Shown here one piece after another: positions 2,949 through 10,521 of a DNA stretch of 64,000 bases. Numbering within the stretch: position 1 is the stretch's first letter; every line of letters begins with the position of its first letter. The position numbers and the translations under genes were made by a program. The notes beneath the pieces were generated by a model. The model saw nothing but the letters and a program-made list of their open reading frames with translations, was not told the DNA's origin and searched no databases. The DNA lies in IMG/VR virus record IMGVR_UViG_3300042402_002641, positions 186,001 through 250,000 of that record, one strand, 5' to 3'.

Positions 2949-3190
2949 AGTTTGTTATACATCTTTTTAATCAATGACATTTGTCTATTGTCTAAAGGTT
3001 GACCGTTAATAATACTCGCCAATATCTTTTTTGTATCTCTAGGATCTAATATAGAAAACACAGATTGTGTTGTATCAACAGACGGTGCAGAAGTTGCAGA
3101 GGTTGATACCGTACTAGGGCCAGGAGCAGTTTTAGCATATCCTTTTTTAAAACTGTCTACAAAACCGTCGTTTAAATCTCGAATTCTCAT
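2945..3190 (-). CDS. Small putative internal virion protein (MRIRDL N-terminus)
   Basis: 81 aa, ATGA-coupled to the upstream gene; shares N-terminal and KKGY motifs with neighbours. Confidence 0.55.
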   Translation of the reverse strand: MRIRDLNDGFVDSFKKGYAKTAPGPSTVSTSATSAPSVDTTQSVFSILDPRDTKKILASIINGQPLDNRQMSLIKKMYNKL

Positions 3191-4221
3191 TTTACAAATA
3201 CACTAGCGGTTCCCTTGGCCAGTGCTGATTCGAACATTCTGCGCTTGTGTATTTCCAGCTTCTGTGCAAATATTTCATTGAGGCTTTTTCCACGATGTAC
3301 TAGACTCTTTGTTTCTGCGGCTGCTTTGATTGCTAGTTTGTCTGACGCTGTTCGTTGGAATCCTGGTTTTGCTAGTGCTGCATCTGCGGCGGCTTTAACG
3401 GCCGGGTCTTTTGCGGGTTTAGACAACTGTTGAGCCACATTAGCAAATGCTCCTTGTCCTGCTGGTGCAGTCGCTGTGGCATCCGCTGCTGGTTCCGCCG
3501 CTGGGGGTTTTGCTGCTGCTAGATTAGGATTACTAGGATCAGCGGTGTTTGTTGCACTGACAGGTGCATTAGCCATAGTATTCGCTGGTGCTGCGGCTGC
3601 TGGCGCTGCTCCTGGCTTAGGTGCCCCTGCCGGTGCTGCTAATGATTTTGTCAACAGTTGCAAAATTCTCTGCTTGCCTTTCTTATCTAACTTATCTACG
3701 TTGGCCTTAACCTGAGCGTAAACAGTTTCTCCGGCTTTGGTTGAAGTTTGCTTATCTACTGCTGCTGTAGTTTTAGCTAACGCTGCGCCTGCTGCGCCTG
3801 TTTGTGGCTTAGCTGGTGCTGTGCCTGCAGGTCCTTGCGCATTGATATCTTGGGTTGAAGGAGCTGCTCCGCCTCCTGCTGCTGGTGCTGCTGCTGCTCC
3901 GCCTCCTGCTGCTGGTGCTGCTGCTGCTCCGCCTCCTGCTGCTGGTGCTGCTGCTGCTCCGCCTCCTGCTGCTGGTGCTTCTGCCGGTGGAGTATACCCA
4001 GGTTTTCCTGCATTAGGATCTGGATCATCTCCTACTACAGCTTTTCCAGACTGATAACCTTTCTTCAATGCTGTGCCAGCACCAACTACTCCGCCAGCTA
4101 CCGCGCCTATGCCTTTGGCAACACCGCCTACAGCTTTGCCTATACCACGGCCCAAGGCTCCTAGAGGGCCTTCGTCTATCTGTTCAAGCTGTGATTCAGT
4201 TAAGATTTCGTTAATTCTCAT
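3187..4221 (-). CDS. Ala/Pro/Gly-rich putative internal virion protein (MRINEILTES N-terminus)
   Basis: 344 aa; [IL]-x-E motifs near the N-terminus, glycine-zipper segment, low-complexity linkers. Confidence 0.6.
   Translation of the reverse strand: MRINEILTESQLEQIDEGPLGALGRGIGKAVGGVAKGIGAVAGGVVGAGTALKKGYQSGKAVVGDDPDPNAGKPGYTPPAEAPAAGGGAAAAPAAGGGAAAAPAAGGGAAAAPAAGGGAAPSTQDINAQGPAGTAPAKPQTGAAGAALAKTTAAVDKQTSTKAGETVYAQVKANVDKLDKKGKQRILQLLTKSLAAPAGAPKPGAAPAAAAPANTMANAPVSATNTADPSNPNLAAAKPPAAEPAADATATAPAGQGAFANVAQQLSKPAKDPAVKAAADAALAKPGFQRTASDKLAIKAAAETKSLVHRGKSLNEIFAQKLEIHKRRMFESALAKGTASVFVK
3863..3979. repeat. In-frame 30-bp tandem repeat x ~4 encoding AAAPAAGGGA
   Basis: Unit GCTGCTCCGCCTCCTGCTGCTGGTGCTGCT read directly. 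Confidence 0.95.
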
Positions 4222-4222
4222 A

Positions 4223-5695
4223 TCAAGCGGTTCCTAGTTGTTTGGTAAGGTAAGCAATCATGCGTTTTCTATCTTTAGTATTTAACTGCGCAATTGACTT
4301 TTTAATTTCTGCATATCCGCCTGTGGCTGCTTGAGCAGCTTGAGGTTCGGGTGCAGCAGAAATTTTTAAATCTGTAAACACTTTATCAACTACTGGTGCT
4401 TCAATGCCGCCATAGTTTAATAAAAATTGTTTGAATTCTTCGCTGTCAGTCGGTGATCCTTCCAACTTCCATGCTGCCAACAGCTTGGCCGATGTGACTT
4501 TTTCAGTGGCTTGTTTGCCTGCCCATGCAGCACCTTTGGCCACTGCGCCTACAGCCTTGCCAGCACCTGCTTTGAGTTTGTCTAAGAATCCTGCTTCAGT
4601 TAGCACACGATTAATAATCATGTAAACCTGGCCTTCACTCAGTGGACGAGTCTGAACATAATAACTTTCTTTTTTATTTTTGTCATCGCTGCCTGTTGAA
4701 GCTGCTACAGCACCTTGAGAAATGGCTTGTCCTGCTCCTGCCATCCCTTTAATCCAGTTTAATAATCCATCATTGGCCAATTGGTCAGCACGAGCGTTAC
4801 CTAATATATCATTAATGGCAGATGCATAGCTTTTGGTGTTAACTTCTCTAGCAATTTTTTGTAGTATATCAAATCCGCCCGGTTCACCGTTGCGAATCAT
4901 ATTCATAGCAGCATTAATACCTTCTGCTTCTTGTGGAAATACATTAACCTTAAATCCTTGAGTCATCTGTTTCCATTCAGTGCCTGGACCAGTTAATGTT
5001 TTAGTAGCTCCCCAAGACACTGTTTCTAAACCAGCGTCCTCTGCTCCAGGAACGGGCAGAGATTCAACACGCATTCCGCCAACAAACTTGCCCAGCATTT
5101 CAAATGCTTTACCAGATAGATAACCTAGAGCAGCAGTTTTAATACCTTTGCCTACGGCAGTGGAAAGTTTTTCACCTTTGATCAGTTCAGCAGCGCCTCG
5201 TAGCACCTGACCAGCAATAGCACCGCCAACTGGTCCACCTGCTAGGGAAGCCAACGCTGTTAGTACACCAATAATTGCTGCACTTTTTCCTGGATTCTCT
5301 TTCATCCAGGATCCTAGACCAGTCAGTTGTTTATCTAGATCAGGAAACTTTGAGCTAACCTTGGCTTTAAGTTGTTCAAATTTTTGATCAGCCATTTTAA
5401 CAGGAGTAGTATCCTGCAGCCACTTACCAACATTGTTGATCACTTCATTGGCTTTTTTAGCTATATCAACTCCAGCTCCTGCAATAGTACGATTAGCACC
5501 ACCTGCTACTGATTGCTTTTCTAACTCGCCGAATACCTGTTTAATCTGATCTGCTGTTAGACTAGCTTCAATAAGAGGCACGAACTCATTGTAAATGCCT
5601 TCTACAATACGTTTTTGTTCAAGAGTTAATCCATCACACGATTCTTTAAGTATCTGTCGATGATTATTATTTTCTAATAGATTTTCAATACGCAT
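4223..5695 (-). CDS. Putative internal virion/ejected protein with hydrophobic glycine-zipper segment (MRIENLLEN N-terminus)
   Basis: 490 aa; AAIIGVLTALASLAGGPVGGAIAG segment; TAAATA motif upstream. Confidence 0.6.
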   Translation of the reverse strand: MRIENLLENNNHRQILKESCDGLTLEQKRIVEGIYNEFVPLIEASLTADQIKQVFGELEKQSVAGGANRTIAGAGVDIAKKANEVINNVGKWLQDTTPVKMADQKFEQLKAKVSSKFPDLDKQLTGLGSWMKENPGKSAAIIGVLTALASLAGGPVGGAIAGQVLRGAAELIKGEKLSTAVGKGIKTAALGYLSGKAFEMLGKFVGGMRVESLPVPGAEDAGLETVSWGATKTLTGPGTEWKQMTQGFKVNVFPQEAEGINAAMNMIRNGEPGGFDILQKIAREVNTKSYASAINDILGNARADQLANDGLLNWIKGMAGAGQAISQGAVAASTGSDDKNKKESYYVQTRPLSEGQVYMIINRVLTEAGFLDKLKAGAGKAVGAVAKGAAWAGKQATEKVTSAKLLAAWKLEGSPTDSEEFKQFLLNYGGIEAPVVDKVFTDLKISAAPEPQAAQAATGGYAEIKKSIAQLNTKDRKRMIAYLTKQLGTA

Positions 5696-5718
5696 TTGTG
5701 ATCCACTGTTTGATTGTT

Positions 5719-5725
5719 TATTTAT
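5719..5725 (-). promoter_or_regulatory. Late promoter ATAAATA for the three-gene MRI operon
   Basis: Minus-strand ATAAATA 24 nt upstream of ATG 5695, just after a terminator-like hairpin. Confidence 0.65.
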
Positions 5726-5728
5726 TGT

Positions 5729-5750
5729 AAAAACGAGCTTACGCTCGTTT
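5729..5750 (-). terminator. Intrinsic terminator-like hairpin
   Basis: Minus strand AAACGAGC-GUAA-GCUCGUUUUU: 8-bp stem, GNRA loop, U-tract. Confidence 0.65.
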
Positions 5751-6175
5751 GCGTTTTCGCTTGTCGCTCAACGCATTTTCTTCTTCTTAGAATTGTTTTT
5801 ACAATGATATTGCGAAGCAATTCAAGTATTATGCAGATTGTTCAGTCACACTTTGCCCAGACCGGGCAAAGATAACAGCATTATGCGAGTTGCACAGACC
5901 ACTTCAGCGTTAGAGCATTACAGAGGCGGTCATCCGGTACCTCGAGCTCAGTCTTTATATGACGGCGATGTGTGAATCTACGCTAACAAACTCACACACG
6001 TGGGGTTTTTCTCCCCTCATTTTGCCTTGTTTTTCTTTTCAAATAACCAAATCGCAGGTCTTAGTAGCGATCGTCATCCTTTCGGGTAGTGGTTAAGCAC
6101 CTTTGCGGCAAGGTTTTCCATCCCTGTGTACACGTAGACCAGGTATAGGGCGCACGAAATTAAGCCTGCGCCAGC
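5730..6175 (-). ncRNA. Candidate large structured non-coding RNA, family not recognised
   Basis: 492-nt ORF-free gap in a densely coding genome, tiled by about 12 helices. G-U wobbles and GNRA loops work only on the minus strand. Includes a three-way junction and a possible 7-bp pseudoknot. Confidence 0.65.
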
Positions 6176-6187
6176 TAAAAAACCGCT

Positions 6188-6622
6188 TTATTTTGCCTGA
6201 GATTGTTCTAAAAGACGCTGTCTAAGTATATTTGAACCGCCTACTCTGACGTTTATAATGCCATTATAATAGTCGTCGGATTCTAAAACCCTGCGTTCAA
6301 ACTGCTCTCGAGCTTCTAAGTATGATAGTTCTGCCTTGGATTTGCAAAGGTAAAGTATTTCTCTTGTGAAGTTTTCCGGACCTAATGCTTGGACGTCTGC
6401 GTTTAACCTGTCTGATGAACCATAGTATTCGCGCCAATCGCTTTCTACTACTGATCTTCTTTTAAGTTTTTTGCCTTTGAGTGGGGGTTTAGTACGTTTG
6501 AATTGTGCTAATTTCTTGCCTATGTACTTCTGTCCGGTGGTTTTATTCGTGATTATATAAACAAAGCCAATATAGCCTTCTGGTATTTCGTTTAATATTT
6601 GATTTTGATACGTCCATTGCAC
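6188..6622 (-). CDS. Stand-alone GIY-YIG endonuclease domain protein (Seg-like)
   Basis: GFVY-x9-YIG motif, YYGSS, conserved Glu (YLEA) and YYN; 144 aa with no appended DNA-binding domain. Confidence 0.8.
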   Translation of the reverse strand: MQWTYQNQILNEIPEGYIGFVYIITNKTTGQKYIGKKLAQFKRTKPPLKGKKLKRRSVVESDWREYYGSSDRLNADVQALGPENFTREILYLCKSKAELSYLEAREQFERRVLESDDYYNGIINVRVGGSNILRQRLLEQSQAK

Positions 6623-6853
6623 TCATTTAGTTAGTTTCGGAGGTCTGCCTAGTTGGCCTTTTCTGGATTTTTTACGTTCTAGTCTTTTTGCCTGTATTTC
6701 CATGCGTCTTGTTGATGCATGGTTACGTATTTCTGATAGCCAATATCGTGCCTTAATGCCTGCTTCGTCTGAATTCTTGTATTCAAACCGATCCTGCCAT
6801 TTAAAATATTCTTGGAAAGCAGCGATCATTAGATCGTGGCTGTCTGTGCTCAC
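6623..6853 (-). CDS. Small basic helical protein, possibly Hc1-like nucleic-acid binding
   Basis: AGIKARYWLSEI...RRMEIQ pattern and Lys/Arg-rich tail; coupled to gp46. Confidence 0.4.
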   Translation of the reverse strand: MSTDSHDLMIAAFQEYFKWQDRFEYKNSDEAGIKARYWLSEIRNHASTRRMEIQAKRLERKKSRKGQLGRPPKLTK

Positions 6854-8628
6854 TCTATGATCTCCACATCGTTGGAATAACTTGTGAATCCATTTTCTTT
6901 GATCACCTTCAGCACATGATTCACACGGCTGGTTAGATCATCTCTATGTGAAATTAGAAATACATTCTTGTCACGCTCGCGGGTCATGCGTTTCAACACA
7001 GCAATACTGGATTCTACTCCGCTGGCATCCATGCCTGAATCCACTAATTCGTCGATGAACAAGAGATTGATGCTGTGATAGAGATTCTCCCATACATCAC
7101 GGAAAGCCCATGACAACGATAGAATCAATCTATTGCGTTCACCGCGGCTCAAATTGTCAAAATCTAGATCCTGTCCCAGTTGGGTGATGATCACTGTGAG
7201 ATCATTTTGGAATTCCACTGTGTGCGGCAGGCCAATCTTGTCCAGATAATAGGTAAGGCGTTGATTAAGGAATGCGAGATTCTGATCAATGATGCGTTTG
7301 CGCACAAAACTATCTTTGTTTGTGAGTAATTTGTACAGAAACTCCTGATGGTCTTTGACACGCATCAGTTCATTCATGTAGTTCCAATCGATCTCCTGCA
7401 CCGCAGTGGCCTTGAGCTCGATGATCTGTTCATCATAGGGATTTTCATCTGCAGCCTTGATCTCGAGATCTTTTTCTAAACTGGTCAGTGTGTTCTTGTG
7501 ATTCAATGCTTCTTCCAAGGTATCGTACTGCACCGTTGGACAATCGCCTAGAGCTCCTAATTCTGTGAGTGCTGATTCATAGGCCGAGATGTTTGCAGTC
7601 TGCGAATCATATTCTGCACAGGCAGCCTCATGATCCTTGCGTTTTGCATCCATGACTTCGTCGTGCTTGGCATCATGAAATTCTTGACCACAGGCATGAC
7701 ACAGATGTCGTTCCAAGGTAGCGATTTCTGCTGCTAGTCGATCACGAAGTTTTTCTTCTCTGCTTTGATCTAGCCTAGCACGATTTAATTGAGCAGTGAC
7801 TTCATTAATGTCTTTGCGCAGTTGATTATAAACAGCCAGAGCCTTGTGTGCAGCCACTTCTTGTTCGATATCTATATGACTCAGATGATCGATACTCTTG
7901 AGAATATTTTCAAGATTTTTTTCTTTGGCTTCATCCCACATGTTCTGCTTGCGCTCTAGAGCAGTGATGCTCTGCTGTATACGCTCGTTGCTGGCTTTGA
8001 CAGTTTCTACTCGAGTGTTCTCTGTGCTGATACTGTCTTTGGTTAGCTTGATCTGCTCTTTGAGAGCTTCTGCTTTTTCACTCAGCAGCGTAATACCCAA
8101 CAACTGTTCGATGATAGCACGTTGTTCTGCAGCCTTCTGCGCCAAGAATGGTTCTGTGTAGGTGTTTAATGCCACAAGGTGCTTGAACATGTCGTGGCTC
8201 ATACAGAATCGTTCTTCGATGCTTTTCTGTGTTTCTCTGCTGTCGCCTTGCGATTCGTCTAGATCTGTGAGCTGCTGTTCTTCGCCATTGACACTGAATT
8301 TCAGTATGTTGGGTTTACGACCACGCTCGATATGGTATTCAACACCGTCTACGTCAAAGGTCACTGTGACCAGCATGCCCTTGCCGTTGATCTTGTTGAT
8401 TAAATTATCACGTTTGATATTGGTCAAGGCCTGTCCGTAGATGCCGTAACTGAGACCATTGATGATAGTGGTCTTGCCTGTGCCGTTTCTAGCACCCGAG
8501 TCGTCACCGCCTAGGTCTAAGTTTTCACCTAAGACCAGTGTGAGCTGTCCGCGATCAAAATCGATGGCCTGGGTCTGTGCGCCCACACTCATGAAGTTAC
8601 GAACTGTGAGATTCTTAATTTTAATCAT
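6850..8628 (-). CDS. gp46: Recombination endonuclease ATPase subunit (Rad50/SbcC)
   Basis: Walker A NGTGKT, coiled coil with CHAC zinc hook, signature LSRGE, Walker B LLFIDE, ISH. Confidence 0.95.
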   Translation of the reverse strand: MIKIKNLTVRNFMSVGAQTQAIDFDRGQLTLVLGENLDLGGDDSGARNGTGKTTIINGLSYGIYGQALTNIKRDNLINKINGKGMLVTVTFDVDGVEYHIERGRKPNILKFSVNGEEQQLTDLDESQGDSRETQKSIEERFCMSHDMFKHLVALNTYTEPFLAQKAAEQRAIIEQLLGITLLSEKAEALKEQIKLTKDSISTENTRVETVKASNERIQQSITALERKQNMWDEAKEKNLENILKSIDHLSHIDIEQEVAAHKALAVYNQLRKDINEVTAQLNRARLDQSREEKLRDRLAAEIATLERHLCHACGQEFHDAKHDEVMDAKRKDHEAACAEYDSQTANISAYESALTELGALGDCPTVQYDTLEEALNHKNTLTSLEKDLEIKAADENPYDEQIIELKATAVQEIDWNYMNELMRVKDHQEFLYKLLTNKDSFVRKRIIDQNLAFLNQRLTYYLDKIGLPHTVEFQNDLTVIITQLGQDLDFDNLSRGERNRLILSLSWAFRDVWENLYHSINLLFIDELVDSGMDASGVESSIAVLKRMTRERDKNVFLISHRDDLTSRVNHVLKVIKENGFTSYSNDVEIIE

Positions 8629-9635
8629 AGGTCGCTGTATATCTCCAACAGCAGGCTCTTGTCAAAGGTATCGCTGTCAATGGCATTGATCTGATTCATC
8701 ACTATGGTATCTACACTTTCAAAATTTATATCTATAGGAGTAGAATTTGCATCTACTTCTATTTTTTCGGGTATCAGCATCAGTTCTCTGAGATCATATT
8801 CAGGCATGAACTTTTCTTTGATGAAGTTGGCTTCTTCAAATGTGATAGGCAAATCAATGGTTACTCGACAGTGCATCTTAGGACGCAGAAGTTTTTCTGG
8901 TGTGTCGATGATTTGACTCAGCTTGTAGGTTCTATATATGGGTTGATCAGGCCAAGATATGTATTCAGGTTTTCCACCCCATTCTAGAATCATCATGCCA
9001 CGATCGTCGTCACCGGCATCCGCATAGTTATGAGGAAATGCATTACCTATGTAAACGATGTTGTTGTTCTGCTGACGTTTGTGGAAGTGTCCTGAGAACA
9101 CATAGTCTTGATGTTGGAAATGGCTACGCTGTAATTGTCCGTGATCTGGCATCTGTACCATAGCATTCATGTAAAAACTAGGCAGTTCGAAATGACCAAA
9201 AATGTATCGGCTTTTGATCTTAGGAACATCGCGCCATTCATCACCAACTAGCCAAGGTAGTATGGTGACATCTTCCATGGTTAATGGATCTTTGATAGCA
9301 ATGATATTAGGAAACAGACGCATGAATTCTATACTGTTGATTTCACGTTTGTCTTTGTAGAACAGATCGTGATTACCTAGTATAAAAAATACTTTTTCAA
9401 ACGAAGCATTTAATCTTTCAAGATTGCTCACAGTATAGTTCATGGTACTGACATCAGTGGTGCTGCGATTATGATGCCAATCTCCGAGGAATATAGCAGT
9501 TTCACAGCCGTTGGCCTTAGCAGTGTCGCAGAACCAATCCACAAACTGTTCGCAGTCAGTGTTGTGTGTTCTTGAACCACCCTTGAGACCAAAGTGTATG
9601 TCCGTGAAACAAGCGACTTTTTTAAATAGACTCAT
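8625..9635 (-). CDS. gp47: Recombination endonuclease nuclease subunit (Mre11/SbcD)
   Basis: Metallophosphoesterase motifs DIH, GDWHH, GNHD, GHF, SGHFH; coupled to gp46. Confidence 0.95.
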   Translation of the reverse strand: MSLFKKVACFTDIHFGLKGGSRTHNTDCEQFVDWFCDTAKANGCETAIFLGDWHHNRSTTDVSTMNYTVSNLERLNASFEKVFFILGNHDLFYKDKREINSIEFMRLFPNIIAIKDPLTMEDVTILPWLVGDEWRDVPKIKSRYIFGHFELPSFYMNAMVQMPDHGQLQRSHFQHQDYVFSGHFHKRQQNNNIVYIGNAFPHNYADAGDDDRGMMILEWGGKPEYISWPDQPIYRTYKLSQIIDTPEKLLRPKMHCRVTIDLPITFEEANFIKEKFMPEYDLRELMLIPEKIEVDANSTPIDINFESVDTIVMNQINAIDSDTFDKSLLLEIYSDL

Positions 9636-9641
9636 AGACTT

Positions 9642-9670
9642 ATTATACCGCCTTTATGATGAAAGATCAA
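9642..9670 (-). promoter_or_regulatory. Sigma70-type promoter TTGATC-N17-TATAAT, probably giving a leaderless gp47 mRNA
   Basis: -35 at 9670-9665, -10 at 9647-9642, only 6 nt to the ATG at 9635. Confidence 0.7.
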
Positions 9671-10521
9671 TCCCAATCACTGCCTGTGTTATCCACAGTG
9701 GTAGTGACTATGGCAGGTCCGGGCACACTGCCGCCTGCGTTCTGTCTGGTCCATGAAGGGTTCATGCCGTTCATTTCTAGAATGTCGTCTCGAATGTTTT
9801 GATTGCGTTTTTCGATATTGATGATTCGCACGAATGAATTAGTAACAGCAGCGGTATAATAAGCAAAAGGATTATCGGATTTGGATTCATCGAACTGTAG
9901 TCCTATCTGAGTGAGTTGTAAGATGGCCTGCCCACGCATTTCGTCATTGTAGGTATAGCCTCGAACGTTGCCTCTAGTAGCATAGCGTTCACAGAGCTTG
10001 ATAAACATGCGAGCGAGATCGTTGGTCATCTGACCGTGATCCTTAGAGAATTCACCGTGTTCGAGATCACCTTTCCAGTGGCTCTTGCCCACACAACTGA
10101 TATTACCTTTGTCATCGAATTTCCAATGTTGGAATGGAGGAAAATTAACTTTGTCATGACTGTCCGCGGTGTTCTTCAACGTCTTTTTGCGACCCGGAGC
10201 CAACGGTATATGTTCAAAGGTCATCACACGGAATATGAGATCTTCCTTGCGCATCTTTTTGTAATCTACTTCAAATTCTTTAGCAGGTAGTTTTTTACCT
10301 CCGGCTATTACCGCTGCTTCGTGTGCCTGTTTACTGAGTCTAGCTGCACAATTTCTTTTAGCCTCTGCTATGGTTCTTATGTTGATTTTAGCTAGGTTAG
10401 GTACTATGAGATCATAGAATCCATATTCTGGTTTGAGGTAGCTGCAATAGGTATTTTTACTAAGGTGTATTTCTTTGAGTAGGTCTTTGTTGGTCAAGTA
10501 CTTGATCTTGGGCACTGTCAT
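9667..10521 (-). CDS. gp55: Late transcription sigma factor, T4 gp55-like
   Basis: YLTNKDLL N-terminus, GYTYNDEM, QFDESKSDNPFAYYT; next to gp47/gp46 as in T4-like phages. Confidence 0.85.
   Translation of the reverse strand: MTVPKIKYLTNKDLLKEIHLSKNTYCSYLKPEYGFYDLIVPNLAKINIRTIAEAKRNCAARLSKQAHEAAVIAGGKKLPAKEFEVDYKKMRKEDLIFRVMTFEHIPLAPGRKKTLKNTADSHDKVNFPPFQHWKFDDKGNISCVGKSHWKGDLEHGEFSKDHGQMTNDLARMFIKLCERYATRGNVRGYTYNDEMRGQAILQLTQIGLQFDESKSDNPFAYYTAAVTNSFVRIINIEKRNQNIRDDILEMNGMNPSWTRQNAGGSVPGPAIVTTTVDNTGSDWD

What the first reader, a model, noticed from the sequence alone, without database searches (positions are those of the whole stretch)
5730..6622. Minimal GIY-YIG nuclease directly followed by the structured RNA: possible ribonucleoprotein or RNA-guided nuclease
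Seen: the first helix begins about 15 nt after the nuclease stop, on the same strand, with no promoter recognised in between and a terminator only after the RNA. The 144-aa protein is a bare catalytic domain with a basic insert (KRTKPPLKGKKLKRR) and none of the NUMOD/HTH modules typical of homing endonucleases. It ends the gp47-gp46 operon. Established: OMEGA systems pair compact nucleases with adjacent structured RNAs. Inference, speculative: the RNA supplies targeting or regulation for the nuclease, perhaps making breaks for gp46/47 recombination-dependent replication or packaging, or acts as an RNA antitoxin.
Basis: inference. Interest (0 to 1): 0.8.

Follow-up and report, generated by a model that had tools for sequence, protein, structure and literature searches.

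The report
Large orphan RNA after phage nuclease
A roughly 445-base structured RNA of unknown function, whose first third is the known 'Polynucleobacter-1' motif, does sit directly after a small GIY-YIG nuclease gene in this phage. However, the RNA and the nuclease family each occur without the other elsewhere, so an RNA-guided nuclease is unlikely.

Summary
A 144-aa SegE-type GIY-YIG ORF (6622-6188) closes a gp55-like/gp47/gp46/small-basic-ORF gene string. Eleven nt after its stop codon a structured RNA begins and runs to an intrinsic terminator (6176-5731).

The RNA's 5' third is Rfam RF01718 (Polynucleobacter-1, 98 bits). A 2010 supplement already noted that this motif lies downstream of the gene family that I show here to be GIY-YIG.

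New findings:
- The RNA is about three times longer than the Rfam model. It has a pseudoknotted middle domain and a 3' module with two direct repeats whose 7-nt cores are identical to each other in each locus and differ between loci.
- The gp46/GIY-YIG/RNA cassette is conserved in more than 200 aquatic phage contigs, some with a different 5' domain.
- The complete RNA also occurs in integrative elements of Burkholderiales with no GIY-YIG nearby.
- GIY-YIG homologues that carry the same basic insert occur without the RNA in isolated phages.
- No guide-like hypervariable end was found.

Verdict: a real, large orphan RNA that is co-transcribed with the nuclease but is probably autonomous. A ribonucleoprotein (RNP) or guide role is not supported, though not excluded. 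Function is unknown.

The parts
9667..10521 (-). gp55-like late sigma factor gene, first gene of the same-strand string
   Evidence: phrog_12791, E 1.7e-80
8625..9635 (-). gp47 / SbcD (Mre11)-like nuclease subunit
   Evidence: Pfam Metallophos; phrog_100, E 3e-64
6850..8628 (-). gp46 / SbcC (Rad50)-like ATPase subunit
   Evidence: Pfam AAA_23 and SMC_N; phrog_77, E 7e-103. Found upstream of the cassette in nearly all related loci.
6623..6853 (-). Small basic ORF (76 aa). No family match. Its stop abuts the GIY-YIG start.
   Evidence: An ORF of 50-110 aa ends at the GIY-YIG start in 146 related loci. No Pfam or PHROG hit.
6188..6622 (-). Minimal SegE-type GIY-YIG nuclease (144 aa): catalytic domain only, with a K/R-rich insert
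   Evidence: PF19835, E 5.5e-37, full model. phrog_447, E 1e-40. Invariant Y22, Y33, R87, E103 and N120 in alignments A2 and A3. 43% identical to P-SSM2 PSSM2_218.
5729..6176 (-). Whole structured RNA gene, from the 5' end of the Rfam match to the end of the terminator U-run
   Evidence: DNA conservation of 70-90% over this whole span in relatives whose GIY protein is about 55% identical. End-to-end architecture is shared with bacterial copies.
6041..6176 (-). 5' domain = Rfam RF01718 Polynucleobacter-1: P1 6171-6150, P2 6142-6122, P3 6115-6098, and a P4 multi-stem 6096-6040
   Evidence: 98.1 bits, full model. Compensatory changes in P1-P4.
5904..6018 (-). Middle pseudoknotted domain. It has a hairpin at 6018-6000 and a long hairpin at 5999-5969 whose loop (5986-5981) pairs with 5909-5904. 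Segment 5963-5959 pairs with 5933-5929 across the helices 5949-5946/5916-5913 and AGG/CCU, around the invariant GGUACC..ACCGCC.
   Evidence: Watson-Crick covariation of columns 251-396, 252-395, 273-308, 274-307, 289-391 to 292-388, and 297-315. Coordinates.
5878..5891 (-). Repeat R1 (A-CUC-X; X = GCAUAAU here)
   Evidence: Identity covariation with R2 at six or more columns, 95-97% identical in four of them
5851..5871 (-). Hairpin between R1 and R2 (CUUUGCCC..GGGCAAAG)
   Evidence: Compensatory changes, columns 449-471
5826..5839 (-). Repeat R2 (A-UCU-X; same X as R1)
   Evidence: An exact CTC-X7...TCT-X7 pair in 154 of 204 viral and 19 of 32 bacterial loci, against 7 of 4720 shuffles
5775..5821 (-). 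Small UUCG hairpin (5821-5809) and an A-rich linker of variable length (5808-5775)
   Evidence: Alignment A1, columns 510-570; the region is gap-rich
5751..5774 (-). Hairpin with conserved loop GAGCG-NN-AGCGAA (possible tandem G.A pairs) and a covarying outer stem
   Evidence: Present in class A, class C and bacterial copies
5729..5750 (-). Intrinsic terminator hairpin plus U-run
   Evidence: Sequence. Stem covaries, columns 605-626.

Best explanation
Shown.
- 6176-5729 (minus strand) is one gene for a large multi-domain structured RNA.
- Its domains are a 5' domain (Rfam RF01718), a pseudoknotted middle domain, and a 3' module. The 3' module holds two direct repeats with identical 7-nt cores around a hairpin, then a GAGCG/AGCGAA hairpin and a terminator.
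- In this phage the RNA is the untranslated tail of the gp55-like/gp47/gp46/small-basic-ORF/GIY-YIG gene string.

Inferred.
- The RNA is made by read-through together with the recombination nucleases.
- It is nevertheless an autonomous functional RNA, not a guide or obligate subunit of the GIY-YIG enzyme.
- It most likely acts in trans by binding two copies of one partner (a dimeric protein or a nucleic acid) through its twin repeats.
- It probably takes part in dealings between gp55-encoding T4-like or jumbo phages and integrative elements of the same hosts. Those elements carry their own full copy behind a T4-late-type NTAAATA motif.
- The GIY-YIG protein is a DNA-binding-domain-less SegE-type nuclease fixed in this phage clade. 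It most likely works on DNA with gp46/gp47, making breaks or cutting DNA structures.
- The partner of the RNA and its effect are unknown.
For: What the RNA is:
- RF01718 hit at 98 bits, and hits in 17 of 17 related loci tested.
- Conservation and covariation over about 445 nt, with G-U pairs on the gene-sense strand.
- One copy in the 64-kb window.

Co-transcription:
- An 11-nt gap after the stop codon, no promoter-like site, and a terminator only at the end.
- RNA-library contigs bridge the gene and the RNA, and depth over GIY plus RNA exceeds that over gp46/47.

Autonomy:
- The full RNA, including linker, GAGCG hairpin and terminator, sits in Burkholderiales integrative elements. These carry DUF6641, tyrosine recombinases and an AAA ATPase, and have no GIY-YIG, gp46/47 or small-ORF homologue.
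- All 27 bacterial loci that have the RNA and enough upstream sequence carry NTAAATA upstream, against 11% of shuffles.
- In phages the RNA always follows whatever ORF is last. In L181 that is a PD-(D/E)XK nuclease; in 7 loci it is an inserted ORF.
- Downstream genes vary and are often convergent baseplate genes, so the RNA is not a 5' UTR.
- The GIY-YIG family, with its basic insert, exists without the RNA.
- The type of RNA 5' domain needs at least 5 switches on the GIY tree.

Twin repeats:
- Identity covariation holds in phage classes A and C and in bacterial copies, with 24 or more X variants.

Nuclease role:
- Among about 300 viral loci, the only GIY-less RNA locus has at that position an orthologue (46% identity) of PA5oct gp342, which is annotated as Holliday-junction-resolvase-like.
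Against: - In phages the gene-RNA adjacency is nearly perfect across 50-98% protein identity. It persists where the RNA's 5' domain is replaced (classes B and C). This is also what a functional pair would show.
- No trans partner was found.
- The read evidence is contigs only: no transcript ends, and DNA carry-over is not excluded.
- The bacterial elements could supply a different, undetected protein partner.
- The late-promoter reading rests on a 7-nt AT-rich motif.
- The nuclease-replacement argument rests on a single contig.
Confidence: 0.45

Rival explanations
1. Regulatory RNP. The RNA binds the GIY-YIG protein (and/or the small basic protein) made from the same transcript. It holds the nuclease in check or times it, acting as an immunity or antitoxin-like decoy. 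The two repeats would be the two protein-binding sites.
For: - Directly adjacent in 116 of the 123 loci that have the GIY-YIG gene upstream, across deep divergence.
- Same transcription unit.
- Two repeat units with concerted cores, recalling repeat-built RNA antitoxins.
- The nuclease lacks any DNA-binding domain.
- A small basic ORF always accompanies it.
Against: - The RNA is complete in bacterial elements without the nuclease or the small ORF.
- Nuclease homologues with the same basic insert live without the RNA.
- ORFs are inserted between gene and RNA in 7 loci.
- The GIY tree does not track the RNA class.
Confidence: 0.2
2. RNA-guided DNA enzyme (OMEGA- or bridge-RNA-like). The duplicated 7-9-nt core X base-pairs with DNA and supplies site recognition to catalytic-domain-only enzymes encoded nearby: GIY-YIG in phages, or a roughly 200-aa tyrosine recombinase in bacterial elements.
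For: - X is variable inside an invariant scaffold and is always the same in both repeats.
- Neighbouring enzymes are bare catalytic domains: GIY-YIG 144 aa and a tyrosine recombinase of about 190-210 aa with only PF00589.
Against: - X diversity is low (about 24 variants, mostly purine swaps) and X is internal, not at an RNA end.
- No enrichment of X or its complement in the 64-kb window or at a fixed nearby place.
- Not mobile: one copy at a fixed syntenic site.
- The recombinase is present in only 13 of about 29 bacterial loci and lies 250 nt or more away.
- Gene and RNA each occur alone.
Confidence: 0.05
3. Selfish free-standing homing endonuclease that settled next to a conserved RNA gene and cuts nuclease-less alleles there. 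On this view the linkage is parasitic, not functional.
For: - SegE-type catalytic domain.
- T4-like phages carry many such genes between conserved genes (established knowledge).
- A different nuclease family occupies the same site in L181.
- The region is a hotspot for insertions.
Against: - No empty site (gp46 then RNA with no nuclease) was seen among about 120 informative RNA-first loci. Homing genes are normally sporadic.
- The protein lacks the DNA-binding domain that gives Seg enzymes their specificity.
- The protein diverges in step with the phages.
- The L181 nuclease is an orthologue of a gene that also lies near gp46 in the related jumbo phage PA5oct, not a typical homing gene.
Confidence: 0.1
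4. Cis-acting element. The structure serves only the operon or the DNA, as a 3' stabiliser or processing site for the mRNA, or as a transcribed replication-origin primer.
For: - Position at the 3' end of the operon, before a terminator at a convergent junction.
- An A-rich linker and direct repeats recall origins.
- Neighbours are recombination and replication genes.
Against: - About 445 nt with pseudoknots and invariant loops is far more than a stabiliser needs.
- It is a stand-alone unit with its own upstream motif and terminator in bacterial elements.
- The repeat spacing varies from 47 to 63 nt, so there is no helical phasing.
- G-U pairs point to RNA-level selection.
Confidence: 0.1

Closest known systems
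Rfam RF01718, Polynucleobacter-1 RNA motif (Weinberg et al. 2010, PMC2864571)
   Same: Window 6176-6041 matches the whole model at 98 bits. The paper's supplement says most examples lie downstream of gene family GOS11034, similar to P-SSM2 PSSM2_218. I show that this family is the GIY-YIG family (43% identity).
   Different: - The family model covers only the first 141 nt, while the conserved RNA is about 445 nt in phages and longer in bacteria.
- The gene family had not been recognised as a nuclease.
- The paper found the motif in no purified phage. Here it is in more than 200 viral contigs.
- Related RNAs with another 5' domain escape the model.
OMEGA systems (IscB/TnpB with omega-RNA; HEARO RNA)
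   Same: A compact nuclease gene next to a large structured RNA on the same strand. HEARO came from the same 2010 survey as an orphan nuclease-associated RNA.
   Different: - Not in a transposon, single copy, fixed synteny.
- No guide at an RNA end.
- Nuclease and RNA each occur alone.
- The enzyme is GIY-YIG, not RuvC/HNH.
T4 Seg (SegE) free-standing GIY-YIG homing endonucleases
   Same: Same catalytic-domain family, PF19835. T4-like phage setting between conserved genes.
   Different: - 144 aa with no C-terminal DNA-binding region.
- Fixed in the clade rather than sporadic.
- Translationally abutted to the upstream ORF.
Type III toxin-antitoxin pairs (ToxIN-like)
   Same: An RNA with direct repeats and a nuclease gene in one transcription unit ended by a terminator.
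   Different: - Gene order is reversed.
- There are only two imperfect repeats of about 25 nt, buried in a large fold.
- The enzyme family is a DNase family, not an endoribonuclease.
- The RNA exists without the gene.
Large orphan phage or prophage RNAs (GOLLD, ROOL)
   Same: Large, intricately folded, carried by phages and integrated elements, function unknown.
   Different: No Rfam match to them even at E of 10 or less. Different size and neighbours.
T4 endonuclease II (DenA) acting before gp46/47
   Same: A small stand-alone GIY-YIG DNase whose cuts feed the gp46/47 exonuclease (established T4 knowledge). Here the small GIY-YIG is co-operonic with gp46/47.
   Different: No sequence relationship was tested or shown here. 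It is a functional analogy only.

Membership tests
Rfam RF01718 Polynucleobacter-1 | Covariance-model score at or above the gathering score, full length | tested here: met
   98.1 bits against 37, model positions 1-141
Rfam RF01718 Polynucleobacter-1 | Model helices kept by compensatory changes in relatives | tested here: met
   P1, P2, P3 and P4 pairs show both-sided changes in 66 sequences
Rfam RF01718 Polynucleobacter-1 | Lies downstream of the GOS11034 / PSSM2_218-like gene (as described in 2010) | tested here: met
   The upstream ORF is 43% identical to PSSM2_218, E 4e-25
GIY-YIG nuclease superfamily, SegE_GIY-YIG (PF19835) | Profile match above the curated cut-off | tested here: met
   127 bits against 25, E 5.5e-37, whole model
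GIY-YIG nuclease superfamily, SegE_GIY-YIG (PF19835) | Conserved motif residues (the two Tyr, Arg, Glu, Asn) | tested here: met
   Y22, Y33, R87, E103 and N120 are invariant in A2 and A3. Mapping them to catalytic roles is by analogy.
GIY-YIG nuclease superfamily, SegE_GIY-YIG (PF19835) | GIY-YIG fold and nuclease activity | not tested
No PDB sequence hit. Activity needs the bench.
Free-standing homing endonuclease (Seg-like) | C-terminal DNA-binding module giving site specificity | tested here: not met
   144 aa with only the catalytic domain
Free-standing homing endonuclease (Seg-like) | Sporadic presence, with empty sites in close relatives | tested here: not met
   No empty site among about 120 RNA-first loci. 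One locus has a different nuclease.
Free-standing homing endonuclease (Seg-like) | Cuts the nuclease-less allele and is over-inherited in crosses | not testable with these tools
   Needs enzyme assays and mixed infections
RNA-guided nuclease (OMEGA-like) | Structured RNA adjacent and co-oriented with the nuclease gene | tested here: met
   11-nt gap, same strand
RNA-guided nuclease (OMEGA-like) | Hypervariable guide at one end of a conserved scaffold | tested here: not met
   The ends are conserved or are the terminator. The only variable segment is an internal duplicated 7-mer with about 24 variants.
RNA-guided nuclease (OMEGA-like) | Nuclease and RNA always occur together | tested here: not met
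   The RNA occurs without the gene in 27-29 bacterial loci and in L181. The gene occurs without the RNA in Melnitz, P-SSM2 and others.
RNA-guided nuclease (OMEGA-like) | Mobile-element context with multiple copies | tested here: not met
   One copy in 64 kb and fixed synteny after gp46
RNA-guided nuclease (OMEGA-like) | RNA-dependent, programmable cleavage | not testable with these tools
   Needs biochemistry
Type III toxin-antitoxin | Tandem array of near-identical RNA repeats upstream of an endoribonuclease toxin | tested here: not met
   Two imperfect repeats 47-63 nt apart, downstream of a DNase-family gene
Group I intron carrying a homing endonuclease | Match to intron models, and flanking ORFs that are halves of one gene | tested here: not met
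   No Rfam intron hit at E of 10 or less. The upstream ORF abuts the GIY start, and downstream genes vary between loci.

The most novel reading that the evidence does not exclude
The RNA may be a programmable recognition scaffold. Its two identical 7-9-nt cores would read the same nucleic-acid sequence twice, for example the shared core of two DNA sites or two copies of one RNA. It would lend that specificity to catalytic-domain-only enzymes encoded beside it: GIY-YIG in phages and a roughly 200-aa tyrosine recombinase in bacterial elements. That would be a new kind of RNA-directed DNA enzyme outside the CRISPR, OMEGA and IS110 families.
Probability: 0.06. Interest if true: 0.95.

Novelty: new member of a known kind. 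Interest (0 to 1): 0.55.

Why it matters
Polynucleobacter-1 has been an orphan Rfam motif since 2010. This work makes four points about it:
- It is only the first third of a large, pseudoknotted RNA of about 450-560 nt.
- The RNA is common in aquatic T4-like or jumbo phage contigs. There it ends a conserved recombination-nuclease operon.
- The same RNA sits, with what looks like its own phage-late-type promoter, in integrative elements of freshwater Burkholderiales.
- It has variants with a swapped 5' domain and an invariant 3' module.

Large, complex bacterial or phage RNAs of unknown function are few, and several have proved to have unusual roles. The twin repeats with identical cores are a concrete, mutable feature on which experiments can be built.

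The result also removes a tempting but weakly founded claim of a GIY-YIG RNA-guided nuclease. It further suggests that hundreds of phage genes labelled 'NAD synthetase' are GIY-YIG nucleases.

Tried and rejected
- Group I intron or any other Rfam family in 5600-6700: nothing beyond RF01718, even at E of 10 or less.
- 5' UTR or riboswitch of the downstream gene: downstream genes differ between loci and are often convergent.
- A cis partner for the repeat core X: mutual information over the alignment gives no Watson-Crick partner. A scan of +/-6 kb on the same strand finds no consistent site.
- X as a genome-wide motif: 21 matches in the window against 19.1 +/- 4.2 expected.
- DNA helical phasing of the repeats: the spacing varies from 47 to 63 nt.
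- R1-R2 mutual pairing, or palindromic X: checked by hand on the variants and not consistent.
- Homology between the phage small basic ORF and bacterial DUF6641: hhalign probability 0.1%.
- Homologues of the bacterial neighbour genes in the window or viral loci: none.
- Isolated phage with the RNA: no blastn match among 50,697 phage records. The closest isolates by GIY (Melnitz) or by gp46 (Phosso, PA5oct) lack it.
- First viral scan with a 14-mer: too unspecific.
- Read laying: gave contigs only, so transcript ends could not be mapped.
Full report
**1. What is in the window**

The region is read on the minus strand. A same-strand string of genes runs as follows:
- a gp55-like late sigma factor (10521-9667)
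- a gp47/SbcD-like gene (9635-8625)
- a gp46/SbcC-like gene (8628-6850)
- a 76-aa basic ORF with no family match (6853-6623)
- a 144-aa ORF (6622-6188) whose GTG start abuts the previous stop codon

The 144-aa ORF matches Pfam PF19835 (SegE_GIY-YIG) over the whole model at E 5.5e-37 and has no other domain.

A 490-nt gap follows, with no minus-strand ORF of 40 aa or more. Rfam finds RF01718 (Polynucleobacter-1) at 6176-6041, full length, at 98.1 bits against a gathering score of 37. The gap folds better than all 100 shuffles (z = -2.76). No promoter-like site on that strand separates the gene from the RNA. A hairpin plus U-run at 5750-5729 closes the RNA.

**2. The RNA is much larger than the Rfam motif**

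Against these, DNA similarity to the window runs from about 6180 down to 5810-5717. It stands at 70-90% identity even where the adjacent protein is only about 55% identical.

I built an alignment of 66 non-redundant sequences (A1). RNAalifold gives 57 pairs on it, 38 with compensatory changes. Mutual information adds further long-range Watson-Crick pairs that make pseudoknots:
- the loop of the long hairpin (5986-5981) pairs with 5909-5904
- 5963-5959 pairs with 5933-5929
- 5949-5946 pairs with 5916-5913

Frequent G-U pairs on the gene-sense strand show that selection acts on a transcript of that strand.

The raw alignment in the 2010 supplement already shows conservation beyond the model.

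The RNA thus has three parts:
- a 5' domain, the Rfam motif
- a middle pseudoknot domain around the invariant GGUACC..ACCGCC
- a 3' module

The 3' module reads in order: repeat R1, a hairpin, repeat R2, a UUCG hairpin, an A-rich linker, a hairpin with loop GAGCG-NN-AGCGAA, and the terminator.

**3. An unexplained feature: twin repeats**

R1 (A-CUC-X) and R2 (A-UCU-X) flank the central hairpin. Their cores X are identical to each other within each locus and differ between loci. For example, columns 420/488 read GG in 35 sequences and AA in 29, and columns 426/494 read UU in 42, AA in 16 and GG in 6.

An exact CTC-X7...TCT-X7 arrangement 47-63 nt apart occurs in 154 of 204 viral loci and 19 of 32 bacterial loci. 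It occurs in only 7 of 4720 shuffles. At least 24 different X were seen.

I found no complementary partner within the RNA, nearby, or enriched in the window. Identity of two sites points to one partner being read twice, but the partner is unknown.

**4. Co-occurrence, starting from the RNA**

Of 129 viral loci with the RNA core:
- 123 have a homologue of the GIY-YIG (50-98% identity) upstream on the same strand
- 116 of those have it directly adjacent
- 7 have one or two other ORFs inserted between gene and RNA
- 5 are cut off by the contig end
- 1 (L181) lacks the GIY-YIG

In L181 a PD-(D/E)XK nuclease sits in that place (PF24608, E 1e-27). It is 46% identical to PA5oct gp342, a gene that lies near gp46 in that jumbo phage. 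It was found in no other fetched viral locus nor in the window.

gp47 and gp46 lie upstream almost everywhere. Downstream genes vary, and in distant relatives they are convergent baseplate genes. The RNA therefore marks the end of the operon. It is not the leader of a downstream gene.

**5. Co-occurrence, starting from the gene**

A profile of the protein returned 80 further viral loci, nearly all with gp46 upstream. Pooling all loci that have a full-length gene and enough downstream sequence gives three classes:
- 142 carry the Rfam 5' domain (class A)
- 15 give only a weak 3'-domain hit (class B)
- 33 give no hit (class C)

Class C loci still have an ORF-free stretch of 350-550 nt after the gene. 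It is conserved among them. Its 5' and middle parts are different, but its 3' module is the same, including twin repeats with their own X (ACAUGAA, ACGUGAA and others). Rfam sees nothing there.

On the protein tree the class labels are mixed, and class A needs at least five changes.

Outside this clade the gene occurs without the RNA:
- In Melnitz (63.5% identity) the gene sits elsewhere in the genome and has only a 148-nt gap after it.
- S-SRM01, RHph_I1_18, phiN3 and P-SSM2 PSSM2_218 (43% identity) have no room for an RNA downstream.

The K/R-rich insert is present in the four RNA-less homologues included in the alignment (Melnitz, RHph_I1_18 and phiN3 in full, S-SRM01 in shorter form). PSSM2_218 is the homologue named in the 2010 supplement. 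The association had therefore been noted before, but not the nuclease identity.

The closest isolates by gp46, at 46-49% identity, are jumbo phages (Phosso, PA5oct, Atu_ph07). The two whose gp46 region I examined, Phosso and PA5oct, lack both the gene and the RNA at this site.

**6. The RNA without the nuclease**

A scan of one genome per species found 32 loci, mostly Burkholderiales: Polynucleobacter, Limnohabitans, Comamonadaceae and Oxalobacteraceae, with some genomes holding two copies.
- 29 have the 5' domain by nhmmer, and all 7 tested reach 86-98 bits with Rfam.
- None has a GIY-YIG, gp46/47 or small-ORF homologue within the fetched flanks.
- The neighbours are a divergent DUF6641 gene (24 loci), small and large tyrosine recombinases, an AAA ATPase and unknown genes. 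This is an integrative element.
- None of these neighbour proteins has a homologue in the window or in the viral loci.

A Polynucleobacter copy shows the complete architecture down to the linker, GAGCG hairpin and terminator. One copy matches window 5801-5731 at 83%.

All 27 bacterial loci that have the RNA and enough upstream sequence carry NTAAATA upstream of it, against 11% of shuffles. This resembles the T4-type late promoter (TATAAATA, established knowledge). The window phage encodes a gp55-like late sigma factor.

**7. Expression**

Several freshwater metatranscriptomes hold a fifth to a third of the sampled words of 5700-6650. When laid on 4000-9900, their contigs cover the whole operon. 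Summed depth over the GIY-YIG gene and the RNA is several-fold that over gp46/47, and single contigs bridge the gene end and the RNA 5' domain.

These are assembled contigs from mixed relatives. They show presence in RNA libraries. They do not show transcript ends, and DNA carry-over is not excluded.

**8. Interpretation**

The facts fit best with an autonomous RNA gene that this phage clade expresses as the tail of its recombination-nuclease operon, and that host integrative elements express on their own.

The nuclease is best read as a domesticated SegE-type catalytic domain. It is fixed in the clade and co-operonic with gp46/47. The one contig that lacks it has a resolvase-like PD-(D/E)XK gene in its place. 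This suggests a DNA break-making or structure-cutting role in recombination, by analogy with T4 endonuclease II feeding gp46/47. That step is inference.

The rivals rank as follows:
- A regulatory RNP remains possible, because adjacency in phages is so constant.
- RNA-guided cleavage is unlikely.
- A selfish homing gene is unlikely, because no empty sites were found.
- A purely cis-acting role is unlikely, given the RNA's size and its stand-alone bacterial form.

**9. Novelty**

The instance is a new member of a known Rfam family, and its gene neighbour had been noted in 2010. The new points are:
- the true extent and architecture of the RNA
- the nuclease identity of the neighbouring gene family
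- the breadth of the cassette in viral contigs
- the variant 5' domains
- the bacterial-element copies with a late-promoter-like motif
- the twin repeats with identical cores

The function remains open.

Noticed in passing
L232:3451-3950 (also L231, L235, L245, L248, L253 and others): Marine-type relatives have, after the same GIY-YIG gene, a conserved non-coding stretch of 350-550 nt. Its 5' and middle parts are different, Rfam does not recognise it, and it ends in the same 3' module as the window RNA (twin repeats, GAGCG hairpin, terminator). It is probably an undescribed sister class of the RNA.
   Followed up: partly
L318:4100-4800 (also L329, L313, L303, L316, L304 and others): Full-length copies of the RNA lie in integrative elements of Polynucleobacter, Limnohabitans and other Burkholderiales, between a divergent DUF6641 gene and tyrosine recombinase genes. 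A conserved NTAAATA motif resembling a T4 late promoter lies upstream, in 27 of the 27 loci that have the RNA and enough upstream sequence.
   Followed up: partly
window 6623-6853 (-): A small basic ORF with no family match lies between gp46 and the GIY-YIG. An ORF of similar size ends at the GIY-YIG start in 146 related loci, and L181 has one too. It could be a nucleic-acid-binding partner of either neighbour.
   Followed up: partly
L181:1669-2184 (-): The only RNA-bearing viral contig without the GIY-YIG has a PD-(D/E)XK nuclease in its place. It is orthologous (46% identity) to PA5oct gp342, which is annotated as Holliday-junction-resolvase-like.
   Followed up: yes
L130:7965-11148 (also L142, L152, L155, L160, L163, L086): The cassette is an insertion hotspot. 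In L130, radical SAM/SPASM genes (confirmed by Pfam) lie between gp46 and the GIY-YIG. L155 and L160 have similar CxxxCxxC ORFs there, not tested with Pfam. In all seven loci, unknown ORFs of 151-458 aa lie between the GIY-YIG and the RNA.
   Followed up: partly
phage records, e.g. L331:36712-37149 (P-SSM2 PSSM2_218): Many phage records, and phrog_447, label this GIY-YIG family 'NAD synthetase'. The Pfam match and conserved motifs indicate a nuclease, so the label looks like a propagated misannotation.
   Followed up: partly
window 6086-6076 (alignment A1 columns 115, 122, 127): The small hairpin in the 5' domain exists in two discrete forms that switch together (ACCC-GAAA-GGAU versus AUCC-UUNAC-AGGAC; the sequences split 33 to 33). 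This looks like a module swap rather than ordinary covariation.
   Followed up: no
A1 columns 319-387 (L138, L159, L168, L171, L201): Some relatives carry an extra hairpin of 20-70 nt inserted after CCGCCUCUG in the middle domain. This is a typical expansion segment of a structured RNA.
   Followed up: no
window 5717-5726 (-): AATAAATAAA lies directly after the terminator and before the next gene's start. Many relatives have UAAAUA at the same place. It looks like a late promoter for the downstream gene.
   Followed up: no
window 4223-5695 and 3187-4221 (-): The two genes after the RNA (490 and 344 aa) match no Pfam or PHROG family. They occur only in the closest relatives of this phage.
   Followed up: partly
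By gp46 the nearest isolated phages are jumbo phages (Phosso 469 kb, PA5oct 287 kb, Atu_ph07 490 kb). Some RNA-bearing viral contigs are 262-345 kb. The window may therefore come from a jumbo phage rather than a classical T4-size one.
   Followed up: no
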